From: Amphiscolops sp. MND2022
Lineage: Eukaryota
NCBI GenBank assembly: GCA_964187785.1
Contig: OZ076416.1
Coordinates: 32,922,001 to 32,986,000 of the forward strand
DNA length: 64,000 nucleotides
Direction of reading: 5' to 3'
This document shows positions 13,429 to 26,787 of the stretch, piece by piece. Under the pieces are notes generated by a model. The model saw only the letters and a list, made by a program, of their open reading frames with translations. It had not been told where the DNA came from and did no database searches. Position 1 is the stretch's first letter. Every line of letters begins with the position of its first letter. Position numbers and translations under genes: made by a program.

Positions 13429-14133
13429 CGTGGAATCCGGGACACGAAAATTGAGAAAAGTCGTGGAATCCAGGACAAAATTTCTCTTTGATGTTAAGCG
13501 TTTCTTGGATTCCACGACAGTGCCTGTCCTGGATTCCACGCCAATACTGCTGCTATAATGACACTTTTGCCGCTGCTCTCTGATTGGTCCGCTCATTTTG
13601 AATAATCATTTTATATTAATTCAATCTTATATCAAAGGAATTTGTTTCGATTGACACGAAAAATCCAAGAAGTACGAATAGAGATACTCGTGACTGGTAC
13701 CAAAAATGAAGCATGTCTTCAAATAATGGCAGATTGTGATGATCTGGCAGTTTGTTCAAAACGGTACTAAACTTGAAAATACAAAAATTTTGTGTGATAT
13801 TGGTGTGATTGTCTGAATCATTTTGAATTAATATACGAAAAGTAGTGCATAATATTATGTTTGTTCAGTCTACCACTTGAATTTAATTAAAGAAGAGATG
13901 CCGCGTATCGCGTCAAGCATAAAGTCGTGGAATCCAGGAAATTTATGATTTCTGCAATCTGATTGGTTCATTTCGCAAAACTTACGTTTTTGTGGAATCC
14001 GGGACACCGCTGCATGCCGACAGTTCGTACAGCTAAGCATTTGTTACTGGAATCCACGACTAAATCCGTGGAATCCGGGACAAATGACGTAATTTGCAAA
14101 TTTTGCACGGTTAAAGCTATGGTTGTGGAATCC
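13429..14133. repeat. Cluster of ~9 GTGGAATCC(A/G)GGAC motifs in both orientations
   Basis: Copies at about 13429, 13460, 13503 (rc), 13526 (rc), 13924, 13991, 14048, 14067 and 14124. The first four form a nested inverted repeat. Confidence 0.75.
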
Positions 14134-14377
14134 GAGATATTGAACGCACTATGTTGCGCTTTGAGCAAATTAGGCTTGCCTGTGCACTCTAATGTTGAGA
14201 TTTCTACTCAACAGAAATTTTGTAAAGAACCTTGACAACTTTCTCAGAGAGCTGCTCAAGTTTCATGTACCTTGAACTTACCTTAATTGAGAGAACAGTA
14301 AATAAAAATATTGAAAAACTAACACAAACTGAATTTCATCCGATTTATTCAACTTCTAAAAGTAAAATTACTAACAA

Positions 14378-15340
14378 TCACGTTAAATCGTCAGCGTCTG
14401 AACTTTTCATTTCAGCCATCAATTTTTGTCGTTCAGCGGCTCTTCGCAAAGCAACAAACATCTGTTCCTCCTCTTCTTCGAAATTTATTTGACTCACTTT
14501 CGTTTCCTCTGTATCGCTATTTCGTTTGATATTCCCAGAACTTTCATCTGATCTTCTTTCGGGTTTTAGAGGCGCCGAGTTGAACTCTGACATTCTCGGA
14601 GGGGGCTGACCAATCCATTCAAGTTTTAATCTGTTGGTCAAAACACCATGTTCATTCTCAAATGCCAATTGAGCCGAACTGAGCTGTTCAAATTCAATAA
14701 TCGCTGAACCCTTCTTCGAGGAAACAACGACTACGGAAATTTCTCCGTACTTCGAAAACAACTTTCGCAACAAATGCTCGTCATACTGTGGCTCCAAATT
14801 TTTATCCCATTTTAATTTAAATTTGGGCTGGCAATCAGCAAAACATCTCTGTTCCAGGCTTGTGCTTTTCTGTTGATTCAACTCTTTTTTAAGCAGTTCT
14901 TGTTCTTCACGCAAAAGCTTCGACCCGTTGCTTCTCAAATCTCTCAGCATTTGCTCCAAGTTCTTAGTAACTGCGGCACTATTTGCTGGTTCGTTCTTTT
15001 TACTCAAAGCTTCTTGTTCTCTTCTTTCTAAATCTTCTTTCAATTTCCTCCGTTTTGCATCCAATTGGTAATTTCTTTCGGCGGCTGCTTTTCTAGCTAC
15101 AACAATTTTGTCGTACTCAGCCCGAGTTTCCTTATTGGCTAATATTTCGAAGATACAGCTGAGTTTGTTGAATAGTTTGGTGGCTTGAGGATTGTCTGGG
15201 TTTTTGTCGGGGTGACATTTTAGGGCTTGTTTCCGATATGCTTTCTTTATTTCCTTGTCAGATGCTGTATCGTCTATCTCCAAGGCAGCGTAAAGGTCTT
15301 CTTTGAACAATTCAGCGGTGCTCAATTCACTGGAACCCAT
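14378..15340 (-). CDS. DNAJC17: DnaJ homolog subfamily C member 17 (J-domain + RRM; Cwc23-like), intronless
   Basis: J-domain DLYAALEI..EIKKAYRKQALKCHPDKNPDNP (HPD motif), coiled coil RRKLKEDLERRE, RRM-like KLKW..LFSKYGEI..KKGSAIIEF. Confidence 0.93.
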   Translation of the reverse strand: MGSSELSTAELFKEDLYAALEIDDTASDKEIKKAYRKQALKCHPDKNPDNPQATKLFNKLSCIFEILANKETRAEYDKIVVARKAAAERNYQLDAKRRKLKEDLERREQEALSKKNEPANSAAVTKNLEQMLRDLRSNGSKLLREEQELLKKELNQQKSTSLEQRCFADCQPKFKLKWDKNLEPQYDEHLLRKLFSKYGEISVVVVSSKKGSAIIEFEQLSSAQLAFENEHGVLTNRLKLEWIGQPPPRMSEFNSAPLKPERRSDESSGNIKRNSDTEETKVSQINFEEEEEQMFVALRRAAERQKLMAEMKSSDADDLT

Positions 15341-15621
15341 TGATGCACTGAAAAAAATTAAGTGAATTAATAAGTTTCTATATAAACAAACTTATAAGCA
15401 AGTTATCATTGAGCAAGGTACCATTCCACATATATTTTTTTCAAAAATGAAACCAATAAAGGAAAGCTTCAAATTAAAGTTAGACGATCTTACAGAAACA
15501 TGCGTCAATTTTAGTTATTTTTTTTCAGTCAGCAGCTTGTAAATTCTTCAACAATAACCCAAAAGTTGAACGAAAAGCAGATTGGTACCTCGAGTAATAT
15601 AGTGTAATAAACAACCTTTTC

Positions 15622-16552
15622 TTAGTTCTCTTTCCTATTTTGGAACCGAAGTACATGAAGATGCTCTCCGATAATTTTTCTCTCCTTCACAACGACTGGT
15701 TCTGAAAACCCGTTTTCTTCCATCTGTTGCGAAATCGCGGGAATGTCATTTGAGGATATTGCGACAAGGTAAAATAGTCCATTAGGAGAAATGAAATGGG
15801 GTAAAAGTGGAATCAGCTGTTGAAGCACGTCTGTTCCTTTGCTTCCTCCATTCCAAGTTTTTCCCAATAAAGTTAAATCTGCATTAGCAAGTTCGGCCTC
15901 TTCGCAACAGACATAAGGAGGGTTGAAGATCAGCACGTCGCAAATACCGGCAAGAAGCGATGACCGTTCTACTGTCTTCAGAAACTATTTGAAACAAGAG
16001 CAATGAAGTTGTAGAAGATCAAAGCTTTATTTTTTTACAATTAAAACTAGCTTGTTGAAGCCCTTTCGTAGAAGTGGAACTTCAAAATGCGTCAACTTCT
16101 AGAAGCTGTGTGAAATTGAAATTTGAAAATAAGCTTAGAAAGTCTACATTGCTTCATTCCATTTCACTATTGATTGGTATTGTTTTTCTAAATAAATGTT
16201 ACTGTGGGCGGTCATAGCTACCTTTTGGCATGAAAACACTATCAAGAACATCGACATTTATAACGTCGAAGCATTTTGGACTCTGATTCCGACTGAAAGT
16301 CTGACACGTTGCGTGGCAGGCATCACTCGATATATCGAGACCCATGTAAAAACATCTGGAACCCAGGGTGCGAGACAAAGCACATAAAATGACCCCAGAC
16401 CCAACACCGACCTCACAAATGACGGAAGGTGTGTGACCCTTAATCAGGTCAATGTCTTGTTCTAATGCATCTAACAGAAGAAAGGAGTCCTCTCGTGGCT
16501 CATAAACCAAATCAGGGTCAATGTGTAAGGTACAAGGAGTTTCCATTCTCAT
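15622..16552 (-). CDS. N6AMT1: HemK2/N6AMT1 methyltransferase (eRF1 Gln methyltransferase), 2 exons (16552-16222, 15971-15622)
   Basis: VYEPREDSFLLLDALE, EVGVGSG (SAM motif I), NPPYV motif, WNGG-KG-DV. The inferred 250-nt GT..AG intron 15972-16221 keeps the frame. Confidence 0.93.
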
Positions 16553-16829
16553 TCATCAAAGTCTGAAAATAAGATAAAGCGCCATGACATCGGTTCCAAA
16601 AACATTGATTCTCGAAGTACAAACCTAGAGTAAAAATGGTAGAAAAGGCTTTTGGACAAAATCTTCAAAAAATAAATATTACAAATAAACAATTTCGAAG
16701 GAATGAAATATAAACATAAATTGAAGAATTAAGATGGAAATAGCACCAGCACCGTTGCCAAAAGACATGTCAAAGCACAGCAACTTTTAAACATGATTGT
16801 TAGATTTTAAAAAAGAAGCTTTTGAACTA

Positions 16830-18441
16830 TTAGAAAAGCGAAGGCCATAACCGTTTTTTGGCAATATAGAGAACTGTACAAAGGAATAAAGTGAGAGCAA
16901 GAAATATAAGAAGTTTATCAGTGAAGGCTCGTCTGTCGTACTTCGATAGGAGCTTCCGTGAAGTGCCTATTACACTCTTCATGTTTTTGAACTCTTCTGA
17001 AGTTTCTTGTAAAGCTGAAACAAAAAACATGTCAAAAGCCCGGCTTGGTTTTTCTCTAGTTTGCTGTCAGGAACAACCGCTTTTCCTAACTTTTAACCTA
17101 TATTCGCAAAATTTTTCGTAGGATTATTGAAATTGCACCCGTCGACGATGTGAAGAAAAAACTTTTAGAAAATAACTTTTAAAAGTCGGTTTTCATTCTT
17201 TTAACTTCCTCTACGTCTCTCTATCTTAGCTTACATCGTATAAAGACCGCGCGCTATGACAGCCAGGTTTGCTAGCAATACATGATGTTTGCCCAATATT
17301 AAACGAGAGGGCCACTCTAAAAATGAGGGTAGGAAGTGGTGTCGTCACGGTGCAAGCTGCAGGGCCTCTGTGCATTGTCAATAACGGCGGTTCAGTACAT
17401 CAAATAGGAAAAACTTCAGCAAGTGGAGGACCAATTTATAGAATGAAAACATTTTTTTTCGTGTCTAGTTTCTTTTTTAAAACTGGAATAACATGTTAAT
17501 TAGTTGAATCGGTATAAAAAACTATATACTTCGTTACATTTAAAAGGAAAATGTATAAGTGGGAAATGCACAAACTATAAGGGCCGTACAAATTGGTCTA
17601 GTTTCTTTCACTGTTTTCCTTCAACTTTTCTACTAACTGTTAGATGAGAGCGCCAAACTCTCGAGGGTTCTTTCCGACTTTCGCACTTCCTCGGCTAACA
17701 TGCGACTCACTGCAGTCAAGTTATCTGTGACGTCACTGGCTTGCTGTCGGACAGATGCTCGATCATACTTCACATTTCTTGGTCTGATCCCATTGTGACC
17801 ATGTGTCAACAGAGCCTCTCGTGTTACCTTGTACACGGAATAAGAAATGACAAAATGGAATTTTTCATGGAATTTTTCTATCCCCCCAGAGTCCATAGGC
17901 AAGTCTCTAAGATCTTGAAATAGCAAGAATTTGGACGTAAATGTGTATTTTAATTAACTTTGCTACCGTACTAATTAGAGCTTTTACTATGAGATTACAC
18001 GACAAATCTATGACATTATAATTTCACATTGAAGAGAAAGATGTCGCATAATTTTGAAACTGAAAACTTCCCGGTCAAATATGTTGACTTTGAAGGAAAT
18101 GGATTTTGAAGATCAAAACCACTCACTTTTTCTATCTCCGCGTGACATTCCACATTGGCTTTTCTTAAAGCAGTTCGTAAAGAAGCCAACAGACTTTTGT
18201 AAGAATTGAAGTCACTTTCAATTGCTTCCCTGGACGATTTGGAAGGTGCTTCTTCGCTGCAAATACTGAGCTGCTCCAATTTTGACTCAAATTGTTTGAA
18301 TGAGCTGCGAACCTCATTGTTAATCTCTTCCAATTCTTCAATAGAGTTGACTTGAGATTTGATGTCTAATAATTTGGAACGAACTTTCACGTTTATTTGG
18401 TTCAAATCACCCACAATCATTTTTGTTTCGTCGTTTTCCAT
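16830..18441 (-). CDS. BNIP1: Vesicle-transport SNARE SEC20/BNIP1, 3 exons (18441-18127, 17827-17638, 17014-16830)
   Basis: LRTALRKAN, SNARE-like VTDNLTAVSRMLAEEVRKSERTLESL, C-terminal SRKLLSKYDRRAFTDKLLIFLALTLFLCTVLYIAKKRL. The GTGAGT and GTTAGT donors and AAG/CAG acceptors give an in-frame splice. Confidence 0.9.
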
Positions 18442-18594
18442 TATTCTGAAATGGCAACAATCTGTGAGGCCCAATGGTTGAGATCAATCAATGGTCAATA
18501 ACGTGAATCAAAATGCAAAAAAAATCGCTATCAGAACCCAGTGAAAAAATAATTGCGAGACTTTTATTGATATATTCAATGTGACTCCACACAT

Positions 18595-20475
18595 CAGGGA
18601 TTGGAAATAATTGATTGCCAATTAATTTAATTGCAATTAATTGGCAAAATTAATTGATTGGGCCCGAAACCAATAATTGAATAATTGATTGATGAAGTAT
18701 CAATTAATTGAAAAATTCGTTTCCACGAAACTCTGACAATCTGACATGTCTGAGTGAAATGCTTCATTTTCATTTTTCAATGTCATGCAAAGCAGCTGTG
18801 AGTTGAATAACTTTTTTTTCACATTTTCAGGTTGTGATATGACATCCAAGCCAATTAAGTCCATCTGCATGCAATACTTCCATCAGCCTGCGCCTGTAGA
18901 TGAGCCGGACATATGGCAATGTCAATGCAAAAAGCAGATGAAGCAAAAAAAAGGAAGTGGTTGGACTAACTTGCTGAACCACATAAAAACCCAACACCCG
19001 GACTACGACAAGGATGATGGTAAGCAGCAGAGGATTGATAATTACGTCAGCCTTACGAAGAAAGCCAACAACGTGTTTGGTTGGTTAGAGTGGATCACGG
19101 TGACACTCAAACCGTTCGCTTTTATAGAGTGTCCTTTTACAGCCAAGTATTCTAACCTGAACCCGATGTCAACCAAGACCCTGAAGAAGTACATGCACAT
19201 GGTAACCAAGAAAGTAGAGGAAGAAATAGCACGTAGTCTACCAGAAAAATTTTGTATTTTGCTTGATGGATGGACACATAATTCTACCCATTATGTTGGA
19301 GTGTTTGCGTCATATTCGTCAACCGATGCAAATGGCTACCAAACAGCTTTGTTGACATTCAGCCCTCTACTCTCTGAACTTTCTCTGACAGCATTGGAGC
19401 ATAAGAATTTGTTGGATTTCACTCTTTCGATCTATGGAAAAAATATCACGAACGTTATTGCTATTTGTGGTGATAATTGTGAAACCAATAAAGCCCTCGC
19501 AAGCCTGTGTCAAAAACCCTTGATGGGTTGTGCATCACATCGGTTTAATTTGGCTTGTGCCGAATTGCTGGAGGATCATGGCGAAATCATCCAAAAGATC
19601 AATGCTCTAATGGGCAAAATGAAAAGTGTCAAATTGTCCGCAAAATTGAGGCAATTCACACATCTGAGACCTATTCAAGCCAACATAACACGTTGGTCTA
19701 GCACACATCAAATGATAAACCGTTATATGCAGCTGAAAGAATTTATGGTGTACTTTGATGAAGAAAACATATTGGAATTCATTCCATCTCCGAAAGAAAA
19801 TGCGACATTGTCCGAAGTTCAACAAAAATTGGCGACATTAGATTCAGTTACCATGGCTTTGCAACGAGAGAGTACTGATGCTTCTTGCGTCCGGCTTCTT
19901 TTCAATGAGATCAAACGGAAATTCCCCGATCTTGATGGTTCTGACAAGTATTTGTCTCCCACTGCGAGAATAATTAGAAGCCCCAACTTCGAATCTGGAA
20001 TAGTGAAAATTCAGGATGGTAAGGAAAAAGAAATGACGACTGACGAGCAACTGGCATGTAAAAACCTCAGAAAGCACATCGTGGTGGAAGAAGACAACCC
20101 AGATACTTGTGATGATTTTGCTAGCATGATTCTGAACAAGAAGAAACACACACCATCGACAAAATATGCCGATACCCGCTTCATTTTGCCAACTTCAAAC
20201 ATTCTAGAGCGTTTTTTTCAGTAGCGCTGGTATTGCATCGAGTGATTTCCGGCAACGATTGAACCCGACGAATCTCGAAGAACAATTATATTTAAAAACA
20301 AATAAGCGATTTTGGGACATAAGAACAGTTAATGATGTTCTGTCTCAAGCTGAGAAAGAAACCAATTAATTGCTGTAAAGTGCAATAATTGATTGATTTT
20401 TCCTGAAATTCAATTAATTGATTGGTTCTCTCAAAAAATAAAAAATTAATTGCAATCAATTTTTTCCTATCCCTG
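18595..20475 (+). mobile_element. hAT-superfamily DNA transposon, complete (1881 bp)
   Basis: TIR CAGGGATTGGAAA and its reverse complement TTTCCTATCCCTG. Perfect 8-bp TSD CCACACAT (18587-18594, 20476-20483). AATTGATT/CAATTAATTG subterminal arrays at both ends. Confidence 0.96.
18839..20369 (+). CDS. hAT transposase, with one +1 frameshift in a T7 run at 20212-20218
   Basis: BED-finger-like WQCQC..LLNHIKTQH, DGWT, GCASHRFNL (CxxH), RWSS, LPTSNILERFF. Dropping one T gives ERFFSSAGI..RQRLNPTNLEEQLYLK-N (hAT dimerisation domain) ending at 20369. Confidence 0.9.
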
Positions 20476-20867
20476 CCACACATTGATCAAATAACCCATC
20501 TTCGACAGCACATGTAGTGTTCGTCACAAAAAATGCAGTATCGATACACAGATCTTCAAAAAGCTAGAACTCAATTGTGGAATACATCAGTCAACATTGA
20601 GCCCATGAATTCAATCGTTGAGAGTTGAGAATAAGCTGAACCAGCAACGTACACGCCAAAATTCTTGCACTCGCAAGGATCATACCGTGAAGTAACTCAC
20701 TCTTCAAGTAACACTAAATCCGCAGGCTTACCGATAATCAGTTGATCTGCAGGTTTCACGGATTGTATTGATCAGCCTTTCTGATTTGCCAAAAAACTCA
20801 GCTCCAGAAACAAGATGTCAAAAAATATATATCCGGGAAGATCCAATAAAGCTTGTGTTCGATGAAC

Positions 20868-21620
20868 TTATCGATAAAACTCCACAATTTGTCTCGATAC
20901 TCCAGAAGAATTGTTCGTACAGATTGTATTTGAATTAAAATTTTGAGCGGCGTACGATTTGAAGGCTTCGACTGATCCTCCCACTCCAAAATAATGAGTC
21001 TTTGCAGCCAACAATATTTTGCCTGATTGGGAAAGAACAGAAGACAAGAGACTCAAAAGTGCAGGATAATTTTTGCTGTCATAAATTGTTTCACTTGAAA
21101 GGACAATATCGACCTTACCTATGGCAGAAGGCAAGGTGGTGTCATTCCAATCTGCACTGATGAATTTCGTTCGACAGTTCATTTCCTGGCAGCTGAAGCT
21201 CAGATTCAAACACAAATTCGGAAAAACTGACTTCTCGAAGACTTCAAAATTAAAGTCCTGGAACGTAACATATCTTGCTCCCAGTTTCAGAGCATTTATA
21301 CCAAGTAAACCACAACCGCAGCCAAGATCCAAAACACTTTTTCCAGCAAACGAATCTTCATTTCCATGCATGTAGTTCAAGACGTCTAATGTACATTCCC
21401 AAACATCCAGACCACCTTCGTAAACTTTTGGAACTAAGCTGTACTTTTGATTGTATTCCTTTTTAGTTTCCGTATAATACAAAGAGTGAATGACTTTTCT
21501 ATCCTCAGGGGCTACATCTTTCACATGGAAAGTGTGGACTACTAACTTTACAGACGGCTCACAACGTTCATCAGATTTTATCGACTCTTCATCGGACGTA
21601 GAAAAATTGAAACGAAACAT
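20868..21620 (-). CDS. METTL18: Histidine protein methyltransferase 1 homolog (METTL18/Hpm1), intronless
   Basis: VPKVYEGGLDVWEC, VLDLGCGCGLLGI, FQDFN, DIVLSSETIY, LAAKTHYFGVGG. Confidence 0.93.
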   Translation of the reverse strand: MFRFNFSTSDEESIKSDERCEPSVKLVVHTFHVKDVAPEDRKVIHSLYYTETKKEYNQKYSLVPKVYEGGLDVWECTLDVLNYMHGNEDSFAGKSVLDLGCGCGLLGINALKLGARYVTFQDFNFEVFEKSVFPNLCLNLSFSCQEMNCRTKFISADWNDTTLPSAIGKVDIVLSSETIYDSKNYPALLSLLSSVLSQSGKILLAAKTHYFGVGGSVEAFKSYAAQNFNSNTICTNNSSGVSRQIVEFYR

Positions 21621-22838
21621 AACCGTACTGAAAACAAAATAGCACTGTGACTCACAACAGCGTTCACATTCACAGCAATTGTCTTTAAGCAGGTGCCATA
21701 ATTTTTTGAAATAGCTCTTTCAGTTGACAAAGATCGTCGTTATTCATTTCTCATGTTGGGTGCACAATTATGATGGGCTTGTTGAATCAGAGATTGCAAT
21801 GATTTGAGACGACACAGACGATTCAAAAACATCTGATGTTAGTTTGTCGCTGCGGTTGGGCTGAAAGATCACACGAAACCCGGGGACATCGTTCAATTTC
21901 TCCATTCAAGTATTTGATTATAAAAATTAACCCTTACACCCTAAAATGGCCGTTTTGTTTATTTATGGGGATTTTGACACACGCCTAAAATGTGTTATTC
22001 ATGCAAAAGGTTAGGTTTCGATGGAAAACAGCAAAACTTCTATGGGGTCTACGTGCCTCAAGCTATCAAGCTTGGTAGACTGGGTAAGTTGTAACCTTTG
22101 CAACGGATGGGTCCATTATACAACAGTGAACACTGCCCATACTTGCATAGATGCCTTTTCAGACCCAACAAGGTGTTTAAGTAGGGCATTGTTCATTTGA
22201 CGAGTTCCTGAAAACCCGTAGCTGAAAACTTCAAAAACAAAATTTTTGACATCTCGTAGAGCCCGTCCGATACTGCCTTATGCTGCTCGCTGTCGGCTTC
22301 CCAAAGCATTTTCCGGAAAAACCACCGCGAGCAGCCAAATGACAGAAATAATCACTAAGCGCGATTATCAACAGGCATAATCAGGCTAATGTCAGCGAGC
22401 AGGTAAGTGGTCATTTGACCTAAAATCAATTGGCTCAAAGTTATTTGGATTAATACATTCGGACAATTGGCTTAACTTTTGTCAGTCTAATTAGCTACGT
22501 GGAATCAGGTCTAATTAAATAGATCTAAGAGAGGGGCAAAACTGAGATCTAAATAAATTGATAAATAATCAGGTCTGAATTCACTTATCTGGACCACGAA
22601 CCTGATAAATTTCATCATAGATTCTGGACTAGATAGATTTCATCATAGATTCATGGATAGAAAGGAAGCGACACTTTCAAGAGAGTCCTCGACTACTAAA
22701 ATCTCATAATTTTTGAGGCTATGACTAACAGACCTTCAACTTTTACTTTATTTACTCAGAACTGATACCAAGTGCCTAAAACATTATTGTTAGATCAACC
22801 CGCAATTCAGGGGTTGTGTTATATATAATAGTGGAAGA

Positions 22839-23207
22839 ATGGATATGCATCTGCAAGCCCAAGTGGTCAATAACCAGCAGGTATTTAATTTCCCTTTTCA
22901 TGTGGGACATAGTACCAATTTGCTACTTATCCTAACTAGTGAAAGACAGATGCACAGATTGTTCCCCACCGTGATGCCAAATGTAGCAGGTTTTTGCGAT
23001 TGGTGCGGGAAGTGCTACGATCAAATAGCATTGGAAATTTTGGGCGAATATTTAATGGCAACCGCCTACGACACCGAGACAGTAAGGGACCGTGGAGTAA
23101 GATCCCGTGCTTTCATAGATGGTTTTGAAGCTGCTCTATTCTCGTTTAAAAGTGCAGGACTGTCACAACCCCACAGTTGTGCTGGAGCTGTTGGGCAACA
23201 ACCCTAA
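22839..23207 (+). CDS. Intronless 122-aa ORF with a CxxC motif, unknown function
   Basis: TATATATAA at 22820-22828 precedes the ATG. Contains FCDWCGKCYD and overlaps a second short ORF (23119-23307). No recognised family. Confidence 0.35.
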   Translation: MDMHLQAQVVNNQQVFNFPFHVGHSTNLLLILTSERQMHRLFPTVMPNVAGFCDWCGKCYDQIALEILGEYLMATAYDTETVRDRGVRSRAFIDGFEAALFSFKSAGLSQPHSCAGAVGQQP

Positions 23208-23877
23208 ACGAGAATACTTAGTCATCTCCAAAAGAACCCTAAAACAACTCGAGGACTTGAAACTCTTAAACACTCTTAATTTCCTTTTGTTATTTATGTT
23301 GATTTAATTTTCAGTTGATACCTTGAAAATGTCATGCAAACTCTTTAATCTCATTGTTTGATGTTTATGCTTTGACAAATGCCTTAAACAATTGATGCTT
23401 TCATTTTGTTGACATGAATGAACATATGCACTCATTAACTTCGGAGCTAGAATAACGTGACGTCTTTTCTGAACTAATTTCGTGAACATAACGCCATTGA
23501 CACTTTACTGTGTGAGTTTAGTAACGATGAGTATGCGTCATTATGCGGTAATCCGGGTAACGCATATGCGGTACCATGCGGATTCTAACTTATAACATGT
23601 TTTATTGGTGCTTTTAATAAACTTTGATCATACGTCACCATGCGGAAAACCGAATGACGTATATGCGGCATTCGGCAGTTTCCCAGGGACTTGTTGCTTT
23701 AGCATAGTTAGATTATTGGAAGTCATGCAATTACTATTTGTAAGTTATAAATAGAATTACGTCACCCTGACGTAAGTCTATTTATAGTATTTTTGGATTG
23801 ATGACAACCCTAAAATTGAGTGTCATGCTTTGTGATTTTTTCATTTGTAAAAGTGCAGTTTACTTCAGTTGAAATAT

Positions 23878-23898
23878 ATTATTATTATTATTATTATT
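23878..23898 (-). repeat. (AAT)7 3' tail of the CR1-type LINE
   Basis: ATT x7 on the + strand, ~50 bp past the ORF2 stop. Confidence 0.8.
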
Positions 23899-23949: not shown

Positions 23950-26787
23950 TTATGAACGGCAAGTCTTACAAAAACATTTTATATAGAACGAGCAAGAGTT
24001 ATTCAAGCTAAAAGACTGCAATTTATTTTCAAAGTAGGCATCGAGACGCTTAACAAAAAGGCAATAAGGCATTTCAAAGTTGATAACACCTAATCTAATA
24101 AGTTCATTAGAAGCGCGTTTTGAACGGGGGAAGAAGCCATCGTTCGTTTTGAATTTATGGTTATGTTTGAGTTCAAATAGTTTTAGAGTGCCAGATCGTG
24201 TACAGCTGGATTTGTAGGTGAAATCATGCGGAATAATCACTCTCTTGTTGATGATTTTCCATAGTAGTAAAATGTCGATTCGTTGTACCTGGAAACAAAT
24301 TGGCAACAGCTTTAGTGATACAAGAGAGGATACATAATCATTTGAACGAAACACCCATTTCACAGCTCTACTGTTAAATTTTTCCAATTTTCTAAGGCCT
24401 TCAATAGAAGCACACCAACATGGTGAGGCATATAGTAGAATAGAAATTATGCAGGACTGATATAATTGCTTTTTGCGTTGAATTGATATCCCAAAAGGTA
24501 AGTTTCGTCTAAGAAAGTTGAGAACACGAGTGCATTTTGCAATTTGGCAATCAATATGAAGACCCCAGTTTAAATTTTTATCTATGGTAAGGCCGAGATC
24601 AACCACATTTTGAGCTTCTTTAAGGGGAGTTCCTTGCAATACGAGATTGTATTTTCCCGAGTTAAATGGTAAATAGAGACATTTCGTTGGATGGAAATGC
24701 TGACCATTAACTTCGGACCATGATGATAGGCTGTTAATATCGCATTGAATGAATTCGGAGATGGATAATGAATACAATTTGAAATCATCGCAAAACATAA
24801 AGTAATGACTATAATTTACTTCATCGGGAAGGTCATTAACAAAAATAACGAAAAACAGAGGGCCCAGTACGCTACCTTGAGGAACCCCAGAAGTCACATC
24901 AATTACATCAGAGAGCATACCATTGACCTTTACACATTGCTTCCGATTTGTGAGATAGGATGTGATAAGTTCAATAAATGCGTTATCAAAGCCAAATAAT
25001 TGCAGTTTATAAATAAGAACATGGTGAGGAACAGTATCAAAGGCCTTTTTAACGTCAAAATAGACGCTAACAGATGGGGTATTGTTATCAATTGATTTGT
25101 AGACATGGTCTAAATAAGAGACAAGTTGGCTAACAGTATTTCTATGCTTCATGAAGCCATATTGCTGAGCTTTGATGAAATGACACACCCGAGGATAAAT
25201 AAAATCAAATAGAAGTCTTTCACAAACTAAGGACAGTTTTGGCAAATTGCTAATAGGACGATAATTCGTGACATCATTAGTGGAACCACTCTTGTGGAGA
25301 GGGGTAACAAAAGCAATTTTCCAGCAGTCAGGCCATTTTCTACTTGAAAAAATATAATGAAATAATTCTATAACAGCTGGTGCAAGTAAATTGAAGCAGT
25401 TGTTTAAGACGAAGGATGGTAATTCGTCGCAACCTATTGAGCTACTGTCCGGACATTTGCGAAGCAGGGCTTCTACATTAGCTAAAGAAAAATTTACGTC
25501 ATTAAGGCAAAGTGATTGGGTGCCTAATTGGTTTTGAGCATACAGTGATTTAGGGCTAAATGTAGACCCGAAAAATTTGTTGAATAAGTTGGCTTTTTCG
25601 TAGTCTGTAGAGGCTGAAACATCTTTGAATTTCATAATTGATGGTATATGACTACCGTTTTTAAGAGAACGAATAAGTTTAAAGCAGCTATTCGGCGAGT
25701 CCAGATTTAGTTTGTCAGCAAAACAAAGCTTATCAAGTTCAATTGAATCATTTATCTCCTGGGACAAAAACTTTTGCTTGTTTGCAAGGGCAGAGTTGAA
25801 GGGATGACGTGACATTTTTCTGTTGTTTGTCCGGCTTTGATTAAGGAGATGCATTGTATGAGATGAAAAGTAGAAGGGAGCATTGATTCGACGTGACCGT
25901 TTTGTAGCAATTGATAGAGATACTGCATTTTTAACAAGCCCATACCAAGAAGAAATGAAATCAGGGTTCTGAGTAGAGTAACTGGTGAACAGATTGTACA
26001 GAGGGTCGAGATGCTGCGAAAATATGTCAGGTCTAAATGTGTTTTTAGAGATAGAACAGGTAGAGGGCTCCCAAATATTAGATTGTTCAACTTGAAAAAG
26101 AACGGGGTAATGATCAGAAAATCGAGTATTGTAAACTGAATAGCAGAGTTCGTCACATGTGGAAAAAAGGAGGTCAAGAGTGTTTCCCTTAATATGAGTA
26201 GGTACAGTTATAAATTGATTCAGTCCAAGATCGGCAACCAGATCCAAAAATTCCATGTCAGTAGACTGACTAGAAGATAGGTTAACCCAATTAATCTTTG
26301 GAAGGTTAAAGTCACCAACAACGTAAATTACATATGGGATATTAGTACCACGTTTTTCACGAAAGGATGTGAAAATTTTATAGTATTCATGCAAGCAATT
26401 AGACAGAGTAGGCAAAGCAACTTGAAATTTTGGCGTTTGCGGATTGTAAATAACAATAAAATAATTCAGACAATGATCGTCAATAATAACGCAGCCGCCT
26501 GAAAAGTGATATCGTTTAATAGATAAATTCACAATTTTGTGAAACAATGATAAAGAGGATGCAGTCAAGAGTCCACCATGTTCACCTGATTCCCTTTCAT
26601 TTCTGTTGACAACTTTGAAATTATTACCGAGGAAGATTTCTGTTTCGGGTATATCGGATGTAAGCCAGGTTTCAGTAAGGAACATTAGGGAAATATTTTC
26701 AGTAAACACCAGTGAAAGTAACGCTTGTCGTTTTTCAAGAGAACAAATTGATTGGCAGTTCAGTATAAGACAATTTACCTTATCCAG
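23950..26787 (-). CDS. LINE ORF2: AP endonuclease + reverse transcriptase, uninterrupted
   Basis: 919 aa plus 26 upstream in-frame codons. LTETW, GDFN, LDLLF, SDH (APE); YRPIS, FDVKKAFD, GVPQGSVLGP, FCDD (RT). Confidence 0.93.
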   Translation of the reverse strand: MDKVNCLILNCQSICSLEKRQALLSLVFTENISLMFLTETWLTSDIPETEIFLGNNFKVVNRNERESGEHGGLLTASSLSLFHKIVNLSIKRYHFSGGCVIIDDHCLNYFIVIYNPQTPKFQVALPTLSNCLHEYYKIFTSFREKRGTNIPYVIYVVGDFNLPKINWVNLSSSQSTDMEFLDLVADLGLNQFITVPTHIKGNTLDLLFSTCDELCYSVYNTRFSDHYPVLFQVEQSNIWEPSTCSISKNTFRPDIFSQHLDPLYNLFTSYSTQNPDFISSWYGLVKNAVSLSIATKRSRRINAPFYFSSHTMHLLNQSRTNNRKMSRHPFNSALANKQKFLSQEINDSIELDKLCFADKLNLDSPNSCFKLIRSLKNGSHIPSIMKFKDVSASTDYEKANLFNKFFGSTFSPKSLYAQNQLGTQSLCLNDVNFSLANVEALLRKCPDSSSIGCDELPSFVLNNCFNLLAPAVIELFHYIFSSRKWPDCWKIAFVTPLHKSGSTNDVTNYRPISNLPKLSLVCERLLFDFIYPRVCHFIKAQQYGFMKHRNTVSQLVSYLDHVYKSIDNNTPSVSVYFDVKKAFDTVPHHVLIYKLQLFGFDNAFIELITSYLTNRKQCVKVNGMLSDVIDVTSGVPQGSVLGPLFFVIFVNDLPDEVNYSHYFMFCDDFKLYSLSISEFIQCDINSLSSWSEVNGQHFHPTKCLYLPFNSGKYNLVLQGTPLKEAQNVVDLGLTIDKNLNWGLHIDCQIAKCTRVLNFLRRNLPFGISIQRKKQLYQSCIISILLYASPCWCASIEGLRKLEKFNSRAVKWVFRSNDYVSSLVSLKLLPICFQVQRIDILLLWKIINKRVIIPHDFTYKSSCTRSGTLKLFELKHNHKFKTNDGFFPRSKRASNELIRLGVINFEMPYCLFVKRLDAYFENKLQSFSLNNSCSFYIKCFCKTCRS

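What the first reader, a model, noticed from the sequence alone, without database searches (positions are those of the whole stretch)
14378..21905. Candidate SL-trans-spliced eukaryotic operon: METTL18-BNIP1-N6AMT1-DNAJC17
Four unrelated housekeeping genes lie head-to-tail on one strand with ~280-bp gaps (BNIP1 to N6AMT1, N6AMT1 to DNAJC17) and ~540 bp (METTL18 to BNIP1 after removing the hAT). Each ATG is preceded by a strong acceptor: TTTTCAG 7 nt before METTL18 (21628), TTTCAG 4 nt before BNIP1 (18446), TTTTCAG 10 nt before N6AMT1 (16563) and TTTTTTTCAG 7 nt before DNAJC17 (15348). A short frame ending at 21768 may be a fifth, upstream gene only 150 bp away. PCNA, which has promoter-like motifs, lacks such a tract. 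This is the established signature of operons resolved by spliced-leader trans-splicing in nematodes and tunicates; applying it here is inference.
Basis: partly seen in the sequence, partly recalled or inferred. Interest (0 to 1): 0.75.

Follow-up and report, generated by a model that had tools for sequence, protein, structure and literature searches.

The report
Probable spliced-leader operon in an acoel
Four unrelated housekeeping genes sit tightly packed on one strand of an acoel worm genome, each starting just after a splice-acceptor signal. The same arrangement recurs in three related acoels, so it is probably a jointly transcribed "operon", though no RNA data could be found to prove it.

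Summary
METTL18, BNIP1/Sec20, N6AMT1 and DNAJC17 lie head-to-tail on the minus strand. Their spacers are 537 nt (after removing a 1,881-bp hAT), 277 nt and 281 nt. A TTTCAG-type acceptor lies 4-10 nt before each ATG.

The genome is an acoel, most likely Symsagittifera roscoffensis. SL trans-splicing is already published for that species (30% of genes), and its 32-nt leader occurs over 2,000 times in this assembly.

New evidence:
- Gene order, strand and acceptors are conserved in three other acoel genomes.
- Stop-to-ATG spacers there are as short as 25 nt (Convolutriloba N6AMT1-DNAJC17) and 65-66 nt, too short for separate promoters.
- 54 SL-capped acoel transcripts have a median SL-to-ATG distance of 9 nt.
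- Five orthologues of SL-verified genes carry the same acceptor signature in this genome.

Against: no RNA data covered these four genes, so neither SL addition nor a polycistronic precursor is shown. BNIP1-N6AMT1 is 6-20 kb apart in two relatives. The proposed fifth upstream gene is not supported.

Verdict: a probable SL-resolved operon, strongest for N6AMT1-DNAJC17. It is a new member of a known kind; I found no paper describing operons in acoels. First readers of this scan flagged similar candidates elsewhere in this genome, and I checked one (CCS-GLRX3).

The parts
21630..22826 (-). Single-copy sequence upstream of METTL18. It is the candidate outron and promoter region of the unit. It contains the unsupported 45-codon frame at 21905-21771.
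   Evidence: this stretch is unique in the genome, whereas 22827-23878 is a high-copy repeat; nothing is conserved with the closest relative beyond 17 nt upstream of the ATG; the short frame has no homologue.
21628..21629 (-). AG of the TTTTCAG acceptor, 7 nt before the METTL18 ATG.
   Evidence: Orthologous acceptors: TTTTAG 7 nt upstream in L030 and TTTCAG 4 nt upstream in L015.
20868..21620 (-). METTL18/HPM1-like protein-histidine methyltransferase. Single exon, 250 aa.
   Evidence: PF10294, 8e-14. (named hits are 'histidine protein methyltransferase 1 homolog').
18587..20483 (+). hAT transposon (18595-20475) with CAGGGAT... terminal inverted repeats and an 8-bp target-site duplication ATGTGTGG on each side. 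Its transposase ORF is 18785-20224, antisense to the genes. It is inserted in the METTL18-BNIP1 spacer.
   Evidence: TIRs and TSD read directly. (weak zf-BED and DUF659 hits). (DNA depth about 10 times that of the flanks; RNA contigs match at 95-99%).
18446..18447 (-). AG of the TTTCAG acceptor, 4 nt before the BNIP1 ATG.
   Evidence: Orthologous acceptors in L030, L013 and L015.
16830..18441 (-). BNIP1/Sec20 SNARE gene, 229 aa. Exons 18441-18127, 17827-17638 and 17014-16830. Intron 2 carries a short interspersed repeat at about 17240-17560.
   Evidence: Sec20, 1e-16. (exon-by-exon matches in relatives). (repeat).
16553..16829 (-). BNIP1-N6AMT1 spacer, 277 nt. No canonical AATAAA.
   Evidence: not conserved with relatives apart from the acceptor and ATG.
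16563..16564 (-). AG of the TTTTCAG acceptor, 10 nt before the N6AMT1 ATG at 16552. An out-of-frame upstream ATG lies at 16556.
   Evidence: Orthologous acceptors in L012, L013 and L015.
15622..16552 (-). N6AMT1/HemK2-like methyltransferase, about 226 aa. Exons 16552-16222 and 15971-15622.
   Evidence: (59-79% identity to the single- or two-exon orthologues in relatives).
15341..15621 (-). N6AMT1-DNAJC17 spacer, 281 nt. The orthologous spacers are 442, 65 and 25 nt in three relatives.
15348..15349 (-). AG of the TTTTTTTCAG acceptor, 7 nt before the DNAJC17 ATG.
   Evidence: Conserved in L012, L013 and L015; alignment with the closest relative starts 15 nt upstream of the ATG.
14378..15340 (-). 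DNAJC17 (J domain plus RRM). Single exon, 320 aa. Last gene of the tight cluster.
   Evidence: DnaJ 1e-22, RRM_1 3e-10..
14344..14349 (-). The only canonical AATAAA in the cluster, 28 nt after the DNAJC17 stop. It is the likely terminal poly(A) signal.
   Evidence: read directly; the 3' flank aligns with the closest relative for about 78 nt.

Best explanation
This is a conserved acoel gene cluster, METTL18 - BNIP1 - N6AMT1 - DNAJC17. Each mRNA probably gets its 5' end by trans-splicing of the known 32-nt spliced leader onto an acceptor a few bases before the start codon. At least N6AMT1 and DNAJC17, and probably all four genes, are transcribed from an upstream promoter as one polycistronic precursor. 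That precursor would be cut into single-gene mRNAs by 3' end formation plus SL trans-splicing, which is what defines an SL-resolved operon. A hAT transposon has since landed, antisense, in the first spacer.

Shown here:
- The genes, spacers and acceptors.
- The presence of the SL in this genome.
- The conservation of order, strand and acceptors in three other acoels.
- The very short spacers in the relatives.
- The match to RNA-verified trans-spliced genes.

Inferred:
- That the SL is actually added at these four AGs.
- That a common precursor exists.
For: 1. SL trans-splicing exists in this lineage. PMC9911081 gives the leader sequence and reports 30.2% of genes as trans-spliced. The exact 32-mer (up to 3 mismatches) occurs 2,378 times in the window's own 1.07-Gb assembly, against 0 for the reversed control.

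2. All four ATGs have a YTTCAG acceptor 4-10 nt upstream. The background in the window is 2.1% of ATGs.

3. RNA-based calibration. 65 JGI transcript contigs start with the leader. In 54 of them the first ATG after the leader opens an ORF of at least 80 codons, at a median of 9 nt.

4. Positive controls. The orthologues in this genome of five such SL-verified genes (RPL3, PKA-R, ARF, SEC11, HSP60) all have a pyrimidine-rich AG 7-21 nt before the ATG. For HSP60 the AG sits at the relative's SL junction (to within 1 nt) and for ARF at the same distance (7 nt) from the ATG.

5. Synteny.
- Convolutriloba macropyga (L013, L014): BNIP1 > N6AMT1 > DNAJC17, same strand. N6AMT1 stop to DNAJC17 ATG is 25 nt, with TTTCAG ending 17 nt after the stop.
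- Unnamed acoel (L015, L031): METTL18 -66 nt- SDR -587 nt- BNIP1 -235 nt- N6AMT1 -65 nt- DNAJC17.
- Closest relative (L030 and L012, one contig): METTL18 -594 nt- BNIP1 ... N6AMT1 -442 nt- DNAJC17.
- 13 of 14 start codons across the four species have TTCAG 3-12 nt upstream, although the spacers are otherwise unalignable.

6. The spacers meet the operational operon criterion used for the flatworm Macrostomum: less than 1 kb after subtracting repeats, acceptor motif YTNCAG.

7. The internal spacers lack AATAAA. The only canonical signal follows the last gene.

8. The genes are broadly expressed housekeeping types, as is typical of metazoan operons.

Against: - No RNA evidence for these genes. 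The three RNA runs that share words with the region cover only the multi-copy hAT.
- No transcript-derived copy of METTL18 or DNAJC17 exists in the protein or contig collections.
- None of the 73 SL-bearing contigs is one of the four genes.
- There are no SL-capped retrocopies of the cluster in the genome.
- Spacers of 277-537 nt could hold compact promoters.
- BNIP1 and N6AMT1 are 6.3 kb apart in C. macropyga and about 19.9 kb apart in the closest relative. A strict operon would then need very long precursors or has been split there.
- Gene order is also conserved for looser downstream neighbours (window about 8.5 kb and 6.1-3.6 kb). Synteny alone is therefore not specific to operons.
- N6AMT1 has an out-of-frame upstream ATG between the acceptor and its start.
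Confidence: 0.6

Rival explanations
1. The four genes are independently transcribed. Each has its own compact promoter in or near the spacer, and each mRNA is individually SL trans-spliced. Trans-splicing would be present but there would be no operon. The tight packing would be an old microsyntenic block.
For: - Most SL trans-spliced genes in other animals are monocistronic (40% of trans-spliced Macrostomum genes are in operons).
- Spacers of 277-537 nt in this species could hold promoters.
- BNIP1-N6AMT1 tolerates 6-20 kb of inserted DNA in two relatives.
- Looser neighbours further downstream are also syntenic.
Against: - Spacers of 25, 65 and 66 nt in the relatives leave no room for a 3' UTR, a poly(A) site and a promoter.
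- No conserved non-coding block is found in any spacer.
- Such spacing is extreme for a 1.07-Gb genome with roughly one gene per 30 kb (PMC9911081).
Confidence: 0.27
2. The AGs before the start codons are ordinary cis-splice acceptors. They would join short non-coding 5' exons that lie further upstream, and no spliced leader would be involved.
For: - Acceptor motifs for cis- and trans-splicing are indistinguishable.
- GT dinucleotides are present in every spacer.
- One control gene (CAPZB) seems to have a real upstream coding exon in front of a similar acceptor.
Against: - In C. macropyga the DNAJC17 acceptor ends 17 nt after the N6AMT1 stop, so a 5' exon would have to lie inside the upstream gene.
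- Five of five interpretable orthologues of RNA-verified SL-spliced genes show the same signature.
- In SL-capped transcripts the median SL-to-ATG distance is 9 nt.
- Nothing upstream of the acceptors is conserved with the closest relative.
Confidence: 0.08
3. A chance juxtaposition of genes in a gene-dense patch, with fortuitous pyrimidine-AG motifs.
For: The sequence is AT-rich, so T-rich motifs are common. TTCAG occurs 206 times in the window.
Against: - The chance of four of four is about 2e-7.
- The motifs and gene order recur in three other species.
Confidence: 0.02

Closest known systems
Operons of the flatworm Macrostomum lignano (Ustyantsev & Berezikov 2021, PMC8629364), annotated with the same TBONE pipeline used for S. 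roscoffensis
   Same: - A single SL.
- About 30% of genes are trans-spliced.
- The acceptor motif is YTNCAG.
- Housekeeping and conserved genes are enriched.
- Transposons and repeats inflate the spacers, so operons are called on repeat-adjusted distances under 1 kb. That is exactly the situation of the hAT here.
   Different: - A different phylum (Platyhelminthes versus Xenacoelomorpha) and an unrelated leader sequence.
- Those operons are backed by RNA-seq SL and poly(A) peaks. This one is not.
Ciona and Oikopleura (tunicate) operons
   Same: - One SL class serves both monocistronic and operon genes.
- Intercistronic regions can be nearly absent. This is like the 25-nt Convolutriloba and 65-66-nt spacers, where the acceptor follows the upstream stop almost at once.
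   Different: - The S. roscoffensis spacers are longer (277-537 nt).
- The genome is large and rich in repeats rather than compact.
Caenorhabditis elegans operons (SL1/SL2)
   Same: - Co-oriented housekeeping genes.
- Downstream genes are trans-spliced close to the ATG.
- Spacers are in the order of 100-400 nt.
   Different: - Nematodes use a specialised SL2 and a U-rich element for downstream genes.
- No second leader class is known or was tested here.
Chaetognath operons (Paraspadella gotoi, PMC12460157)
   Same: - Genome-wide trans-splicing.
- Operons are defined as same-strand genes with an SL on at least one member.
   Different: - That study's cut-off is under 250 bp. The S. roscoffensis spacers (277 and 281 nt) just exceed it.
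- The orthologous spacers in relatives (25-235 nt) pass it.

Membership tests
SL-resolved metazoan operon | The organism has spliced-leader trans-splicing. | tested here: met
   - Published leader and 30.2% trans-spliced genes (PMC9911081).
- The exact leader occurs over 2,000 times in the own genome, against 0 for the reversed control.
- The leader is at the 5' end of 65 acoel transcript contigs.
SL-resolved metazoan operon | Two or more co-oriented genes with short intercistronic distances. | tested here: met
   - 537 nt (repeat-adjusted), 277 nt and 281 nt in this genome.
- 25, 65, 66 and 235 nt in relatives.
- Passes the Macrostomum 1-kb rule. Narrowly misses the chaetognath 250-bp rule in this species.
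SL-resolved metazoan operon | Downstream genes have a trans-splice acceptor at their 5' end. | tested here: met
   - YTTCAG lies 4-10 nt before every ATG and is conserved in three species.
- The signature was validated on five orthologues of SL-verified genes.
SL-resolved metazoan operon | The SL is actually found on the mRNAs of the downstream genes. | not testable with these tools
   - The only RNA runs offered cover the hAT alone.
- No transcript copies of these genes are in the collections.
SL-resolved metazoan operon | A single promoter and a polycistronic precursor RNA. | not testable with these tools
   - No raw RNA reads, TSS data or chromatin data are available.
- Indirect support only: spacers of 25-66 nt in relatives and no conserved spacer elements.
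SL-resolved metazoan operon | 3' end formation of upstream cistrons inside the spacer. | tested here: inconclusive
   - There is no canonical AATAAA in the three internal spacers. The only canonical signal is after DNAJC17 (14349-14344).
- The poly(A) signals used by this species are unknown.
hAT DNA transposon (the insertion in spacer 1) | Terminal inverted repeats, an 8-bp target-site duplication and a transposase ORF. | tested here: met
   - CAGGGAT... TIRs and ATGTGTGG duplications at 18587-18594 and 20476-20483.
- A 479-aa ORF with weak zf-BED and DUF659 hits.
- Depth about 10 times that of the flanks.

The most novel reading that the evidence does not exclude
Acoels (Xenacoelomorpha) possess genuine SL-resolved operons. 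This four-gene unit would have been kept together since Symsagittifera and Convolutriloba diverged (about 53% identity in DNAJC17). Its spacers range from tunicate-like near-zero (25 nt) to several hundred bases, and it tolerates transposon insertions inside the transcription unit. Together with other candidates flagged in this genome, this would add a further animal phylum to those with operons, at a phylogenetic position relevant to whether SL trans-splicing and operons arose repeatedly.
Probability: 0.55. Interest if true: 0.55.

Novelty: new member of a known kind. Interest (0 to 1): 0.45.

Why it matters
SL trans-splicing in an acoel was reported only in 2022, and that paper does not mention operons. 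Full-text searches found no report of operons in Acoela or Xenacoelomorpha.

If confirmed, the cluster would be a concrete and conserved example for three purposes:
- Annotating acoel genomes correctly, because gene models can otherwise be merged or mis-started.
- Studying how operons arise and persist in a large, transposon-rich genome.
- The debate on single versus multiple origins of SL trans-splicing in animals.

The idea is directly testable with RNA-seq data that already exist for this species.

Tried and rejected
- **RNA reads on the cluster.** The look-up of sequencing runs and read laying offered only three seawater metatranscriptome runs as RNA. Their contigs lie only on the hAT (18623-20297) at 95-99% identity. 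Nothing lies on the four genes, so there is no information on SL use or bridging transcripts. METTL18 and its acceptor were outside the single 6-kb stretch allowed.
- **Exact-protein look-ups** for METTL18 and DNAJC17 returned only genomic contigs and no transcript assemblies.
- **SL-capped retrocopies or paralogues of the cluster** in the own genome: none. The only repeats found were a short one in BNIP1 intron 2 and a roughly 1-kb one upstream.
- **Scan of JGI contigs for the leader**: 73 contigs, none from the four genes. The few with an internal leader and two ORFs look like SL-capped LINE copies, not polycistronic host RNAs. They come from another species (77-84% identity), and none map to the relatives' loci.
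- **Rfam and tRNA scans of the window**: nothing found.
- **Pinning down the true SL RNA gene**: not resolved, because most genomic copies are retroposed.
- **Fifth upstream gene (21905-21771):** rejected.
- **Remnant of the SDR gene** that sits between METTL18 and BNIP1 in one relative: none in this window.
- **CAPZB as a positive control:** ambiguous, so it was dropped.
- **Content of the large BNIP1-N6AMT1 gaps in two relatives:** no recognisable ORFs.


Full report
**What is there**

Reading the minus strand of 14000-22400 and translating it gives four genes in a row.

| Gene | Coordinates (minus strand) | Size | Support |
|---|---|---|---|
| METTL18/HPM1-like histidine methyltransferase | 21620-20868, one exon | 250 aa | PF10294, 8e-14; named relatives are 'histidine protein methyltransferase 1 homolog' |
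| BNIP1/Sec20 | exons 18441-18127, 17827-17638, 17014-16830 | 229 aa | Sec20, 1e-16 |
| N6AMT1/HemK2-like methyltransferase | exons 16552-16222, 15971-15622 | about 226 aa | |
| DNAJC17 | 15340-14378, one exon | 320 aa | DnaJ 1e-22 plus RRM |

Between METTL18 and BNIP1 lies a hAT element (18595-20475). It has inverted termini and an 8-bp ATGTGTGG duplication, and its transposase is antisense to the genes. Removing it leaves a 537-nt spacer. The other two spacers are 277 and 281 nt.

Only 2.1% of all ATGs in the window have TTCAG ending 3-13 nt upstream. PCNA (1352-513) lacks it.

**Whose genome**

The DNAJC17 protein's closest named relative is that of the acoel Convolutriloba macropyga, at 53% identity. 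Two unnamed ENA assemblies hold closer or similar relatives.

The genome paper for the acoel Symsagittifera roscoffensis (PMC9911081) reports a 32-nt spliced leader, GCCTAATTGTTGTGATAAACTTATTAAATAGA, and 30.2% SL trans-spliced genes. It never uses the word 'operon'.

That leader, allowing up to 3 mismatches, occurs 2,378 times in the window's own 1.07-Gb assembly and 0 times for the reversed control. The genome is therefore S. roscoffensis or a very close relative. I hedge because the leader is shared by at least one other species (see below). Earlier notes of this scan had reached the same identification of the leader.

**Direct RNA test failed**

The only RNA runs offered were seawater metatranscriptomes. 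Laid on 14300-20299, their contigs cover only the hAT, at 95-99% identity. The DNA run covers everything, with about ten times more depth on the hAT.

No transcript-derived copies of METTL18 or DNAJC17 exist in the searchable collections. The cluster is single-copy with no SL-capped retrocopies. Whether the leader is added at these four AGs, and whether a common precursor exists, could therefore not be observed.

**Comparative evidence**

Contigs around the DNAJC17 and METTL18 orthologues of three other acoel genomes were fetched and compared.

| Genome | Loci | Arrangement (all on one strand; stop-to-ATG spacers) |
|---|---|---|
| C. macropyga | L013, L014 | BNIP1, then N6AMT1 6.3 kb further on, then DNAJC17 25 nt after the N6AMT1 stop; TTTCAG ends 17 nt after that stop and 8 nt before the ATG |
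| Unnamed acoel, two contigs | L015, L031 | METTL18 -66 nt- an SDR gene -587 nt- BNIP1 -235 nt- N6AMT1 -65 nt- DNAJC17 |
| Closest relative (74% DNAJC17 identity), one contig | L030, L012 | METTL18 -594 nt- BNIP1, then about 19.9 kb, then N6AMT1 -442 nt- DNAJC17 |

- Across the four species, 13 of 14 start codons have TTCAG 3-12 nt upstream. The exception is an AACAG.
- The spacers are otherwise unalignable.
- Nucleotide similarity with the closest relative starts only 11-17 nt before each ATG.
- Spacers of 25-66 nt cannot hold a 3' UTR end, a poly(A) site and an independent promoter. This is the strongest argument for polycistronic transcription, above all for N6AMT1-DNAJC17.

Caveats:
- The BNIP1-N6AMT1 link is stretched to 6-20 kb in two species.
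- Looser downstream neighbours are also syntenic, so conserved order alone is not proof.

**Calibration with real SL-capped RNAs**

A scan of JGI contigs for the last 23 nt of the leader found 73 contigs, 65 of them with the leader at the very 5' end.
- In 54 of these the first ATG after the leader opens an ORF of at least 80 codons.
- The median SL-to-ATG distance is 9 nt, and half are 8 nt or less. This is the same architecture as the four genes here.
- The one contig mapped back to this genome (L039) matches at only 77-84% identity, and the six protein-level orthologue searches likewise gave sub-100% identities, so the contigs evidently come from a related species that shares the leader.
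- None of them is one of the four genes.

I then located the orthologues in this genome of six such SL-verified genes.
- RPL3, PKA-R, ARF, SEC11 and HSP60 all have a pyrimidine-rich AG 7-21 nt before the ATG.
- For HSP60 that AG sits at the relative's SL junction (to within 1 nt) and for ARF at the same distance (7 nt) from the ATG.
- CAPZB was ambiguous.

**Other points**
- The three internal spacers have no canonical AATAAA. The only one lies 28 nt after the DNAJC17 stop.
- The sequence upstream of METTL18 is unique for about 1.2 kb. It is then interrupted by a roughly 1.05-kb high-copy repeat and a LINE.
- The proposed fifth gene (21905-21771) has no acceptor and no homologue.

**Comparison with known systems**
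- The design matches SL-resolved operons of flatworms, tunicates, nematodes and chaetognaths.
- It passes the Macrostomum operational rule: same strand, under 1 kb after removing repeats, YTNCAG acceptor.
- It narrowly misses the chaetognath 250-bp rule in this species, but passes it in the relatives.
- The defining RNA-level features (SL on downstream mRNAs, a single precursor) could not be tested. I therefore file it as a probable member, not a proven one.
- Literature searches found no description of operons in acoels.

**Verdict**

| Claim | Probability |
|---|---|
| Observation | confirmed |
| All four genes are SL trans-spliced | about 0.85 |
| At least N6AMT1-DNAJC17 are co-transcribed as an operon | about 0.6-0.65 |
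| All four genes form one operon | about 0.45 |

Novelty: a new member of a known kind. Interest: moderate.

Noticed in passing
L033-L105 (JGI contigs Ga0073937, Ga0073981, Ga0073986, Ga0073941): 65 assembled transcripts start with the S. roscoffensis leader, yet the one mapped (L039) matches this genome at only 77-84% identity. The leader is therefore conserved in at least one other acoel species present in those marine samples.
   Followed up: partly
L110:1480-1500 (G000:C5, about 52178144-52178164): Between the acceptor and the ATG of the RPL3 orthologue lies TTGTTGTGATAAAAG, which resembles the core of the spliced leader. The first 336 codons are a single exon. This may be a retrogene that kept part of its leader.
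   Followed up: no
L001, L004, L005 (SL at 1501-1532); L022, L024: In some genomic leader copies, the leader is followed immediately by the reverse complement of its own 3' half (a perfect hairpin) and then GTGTTTTTT. Two other copies share about 30 nt upstream of the leader. The true SL RNA gene was not identified among the roughly 2,400 copies.
   Followed up: partly
window 18595-20475: A hAT element with an intact 8-bp duplication. DNA depth is about 10 times that of the flanks. Near-identical (95-99%) copies appear in the assembled contigs of seawater RNA libraries. That may reflect transcription of the family, but the libraries were not shown to be free of DNA and no silent control stretch was laid.
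   Followed up: partly
window 22827-23878: A repeat of about 1.05 kb with at least 40 copies at 93-98% identity across the genome. It contains a 122-codon ORF with no Pfam match, and it lies between the cluster and a LINE (23950-26709).
   Followed up: partly
window 17240-17560: A short interspersed repeat in BNIP1 intron 2, with at least 40 copies at 75-92% identity. It explains the depth peak there in the DNA run.
   Followed up: partly
window 16554-16556: An out-of-frame ATG lies between the N6AMT1 acceptor and its start codon. It opens a 12-codon upstream ORF that overlaps the start, and it is absent from the closest relative.
   Followed up: no
L015:4501-5352 and L031:10850-11701: In one relative a short-chain dehydrogenase (SDR) gene sits between METTL18 and BNIP1, only 66 nt after the METTL18 stop. 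No trace of it is found in this window. The cluster has therefore gained or lost a member.
   Followed up: partly
This is a second operon-like pair on the same chromosome.
   Followed up: partly
window 8497-7770 and 6125-3567: Two further minus-strand genes downstream of DNAJC17 are syntenic in the relatives but lie 2-8 kb away. One starts MSQHGDTETKF. The other is an 864-codon ORF with no Pfam match. Their acceptors are weaker or absent.
   Followed up: partly
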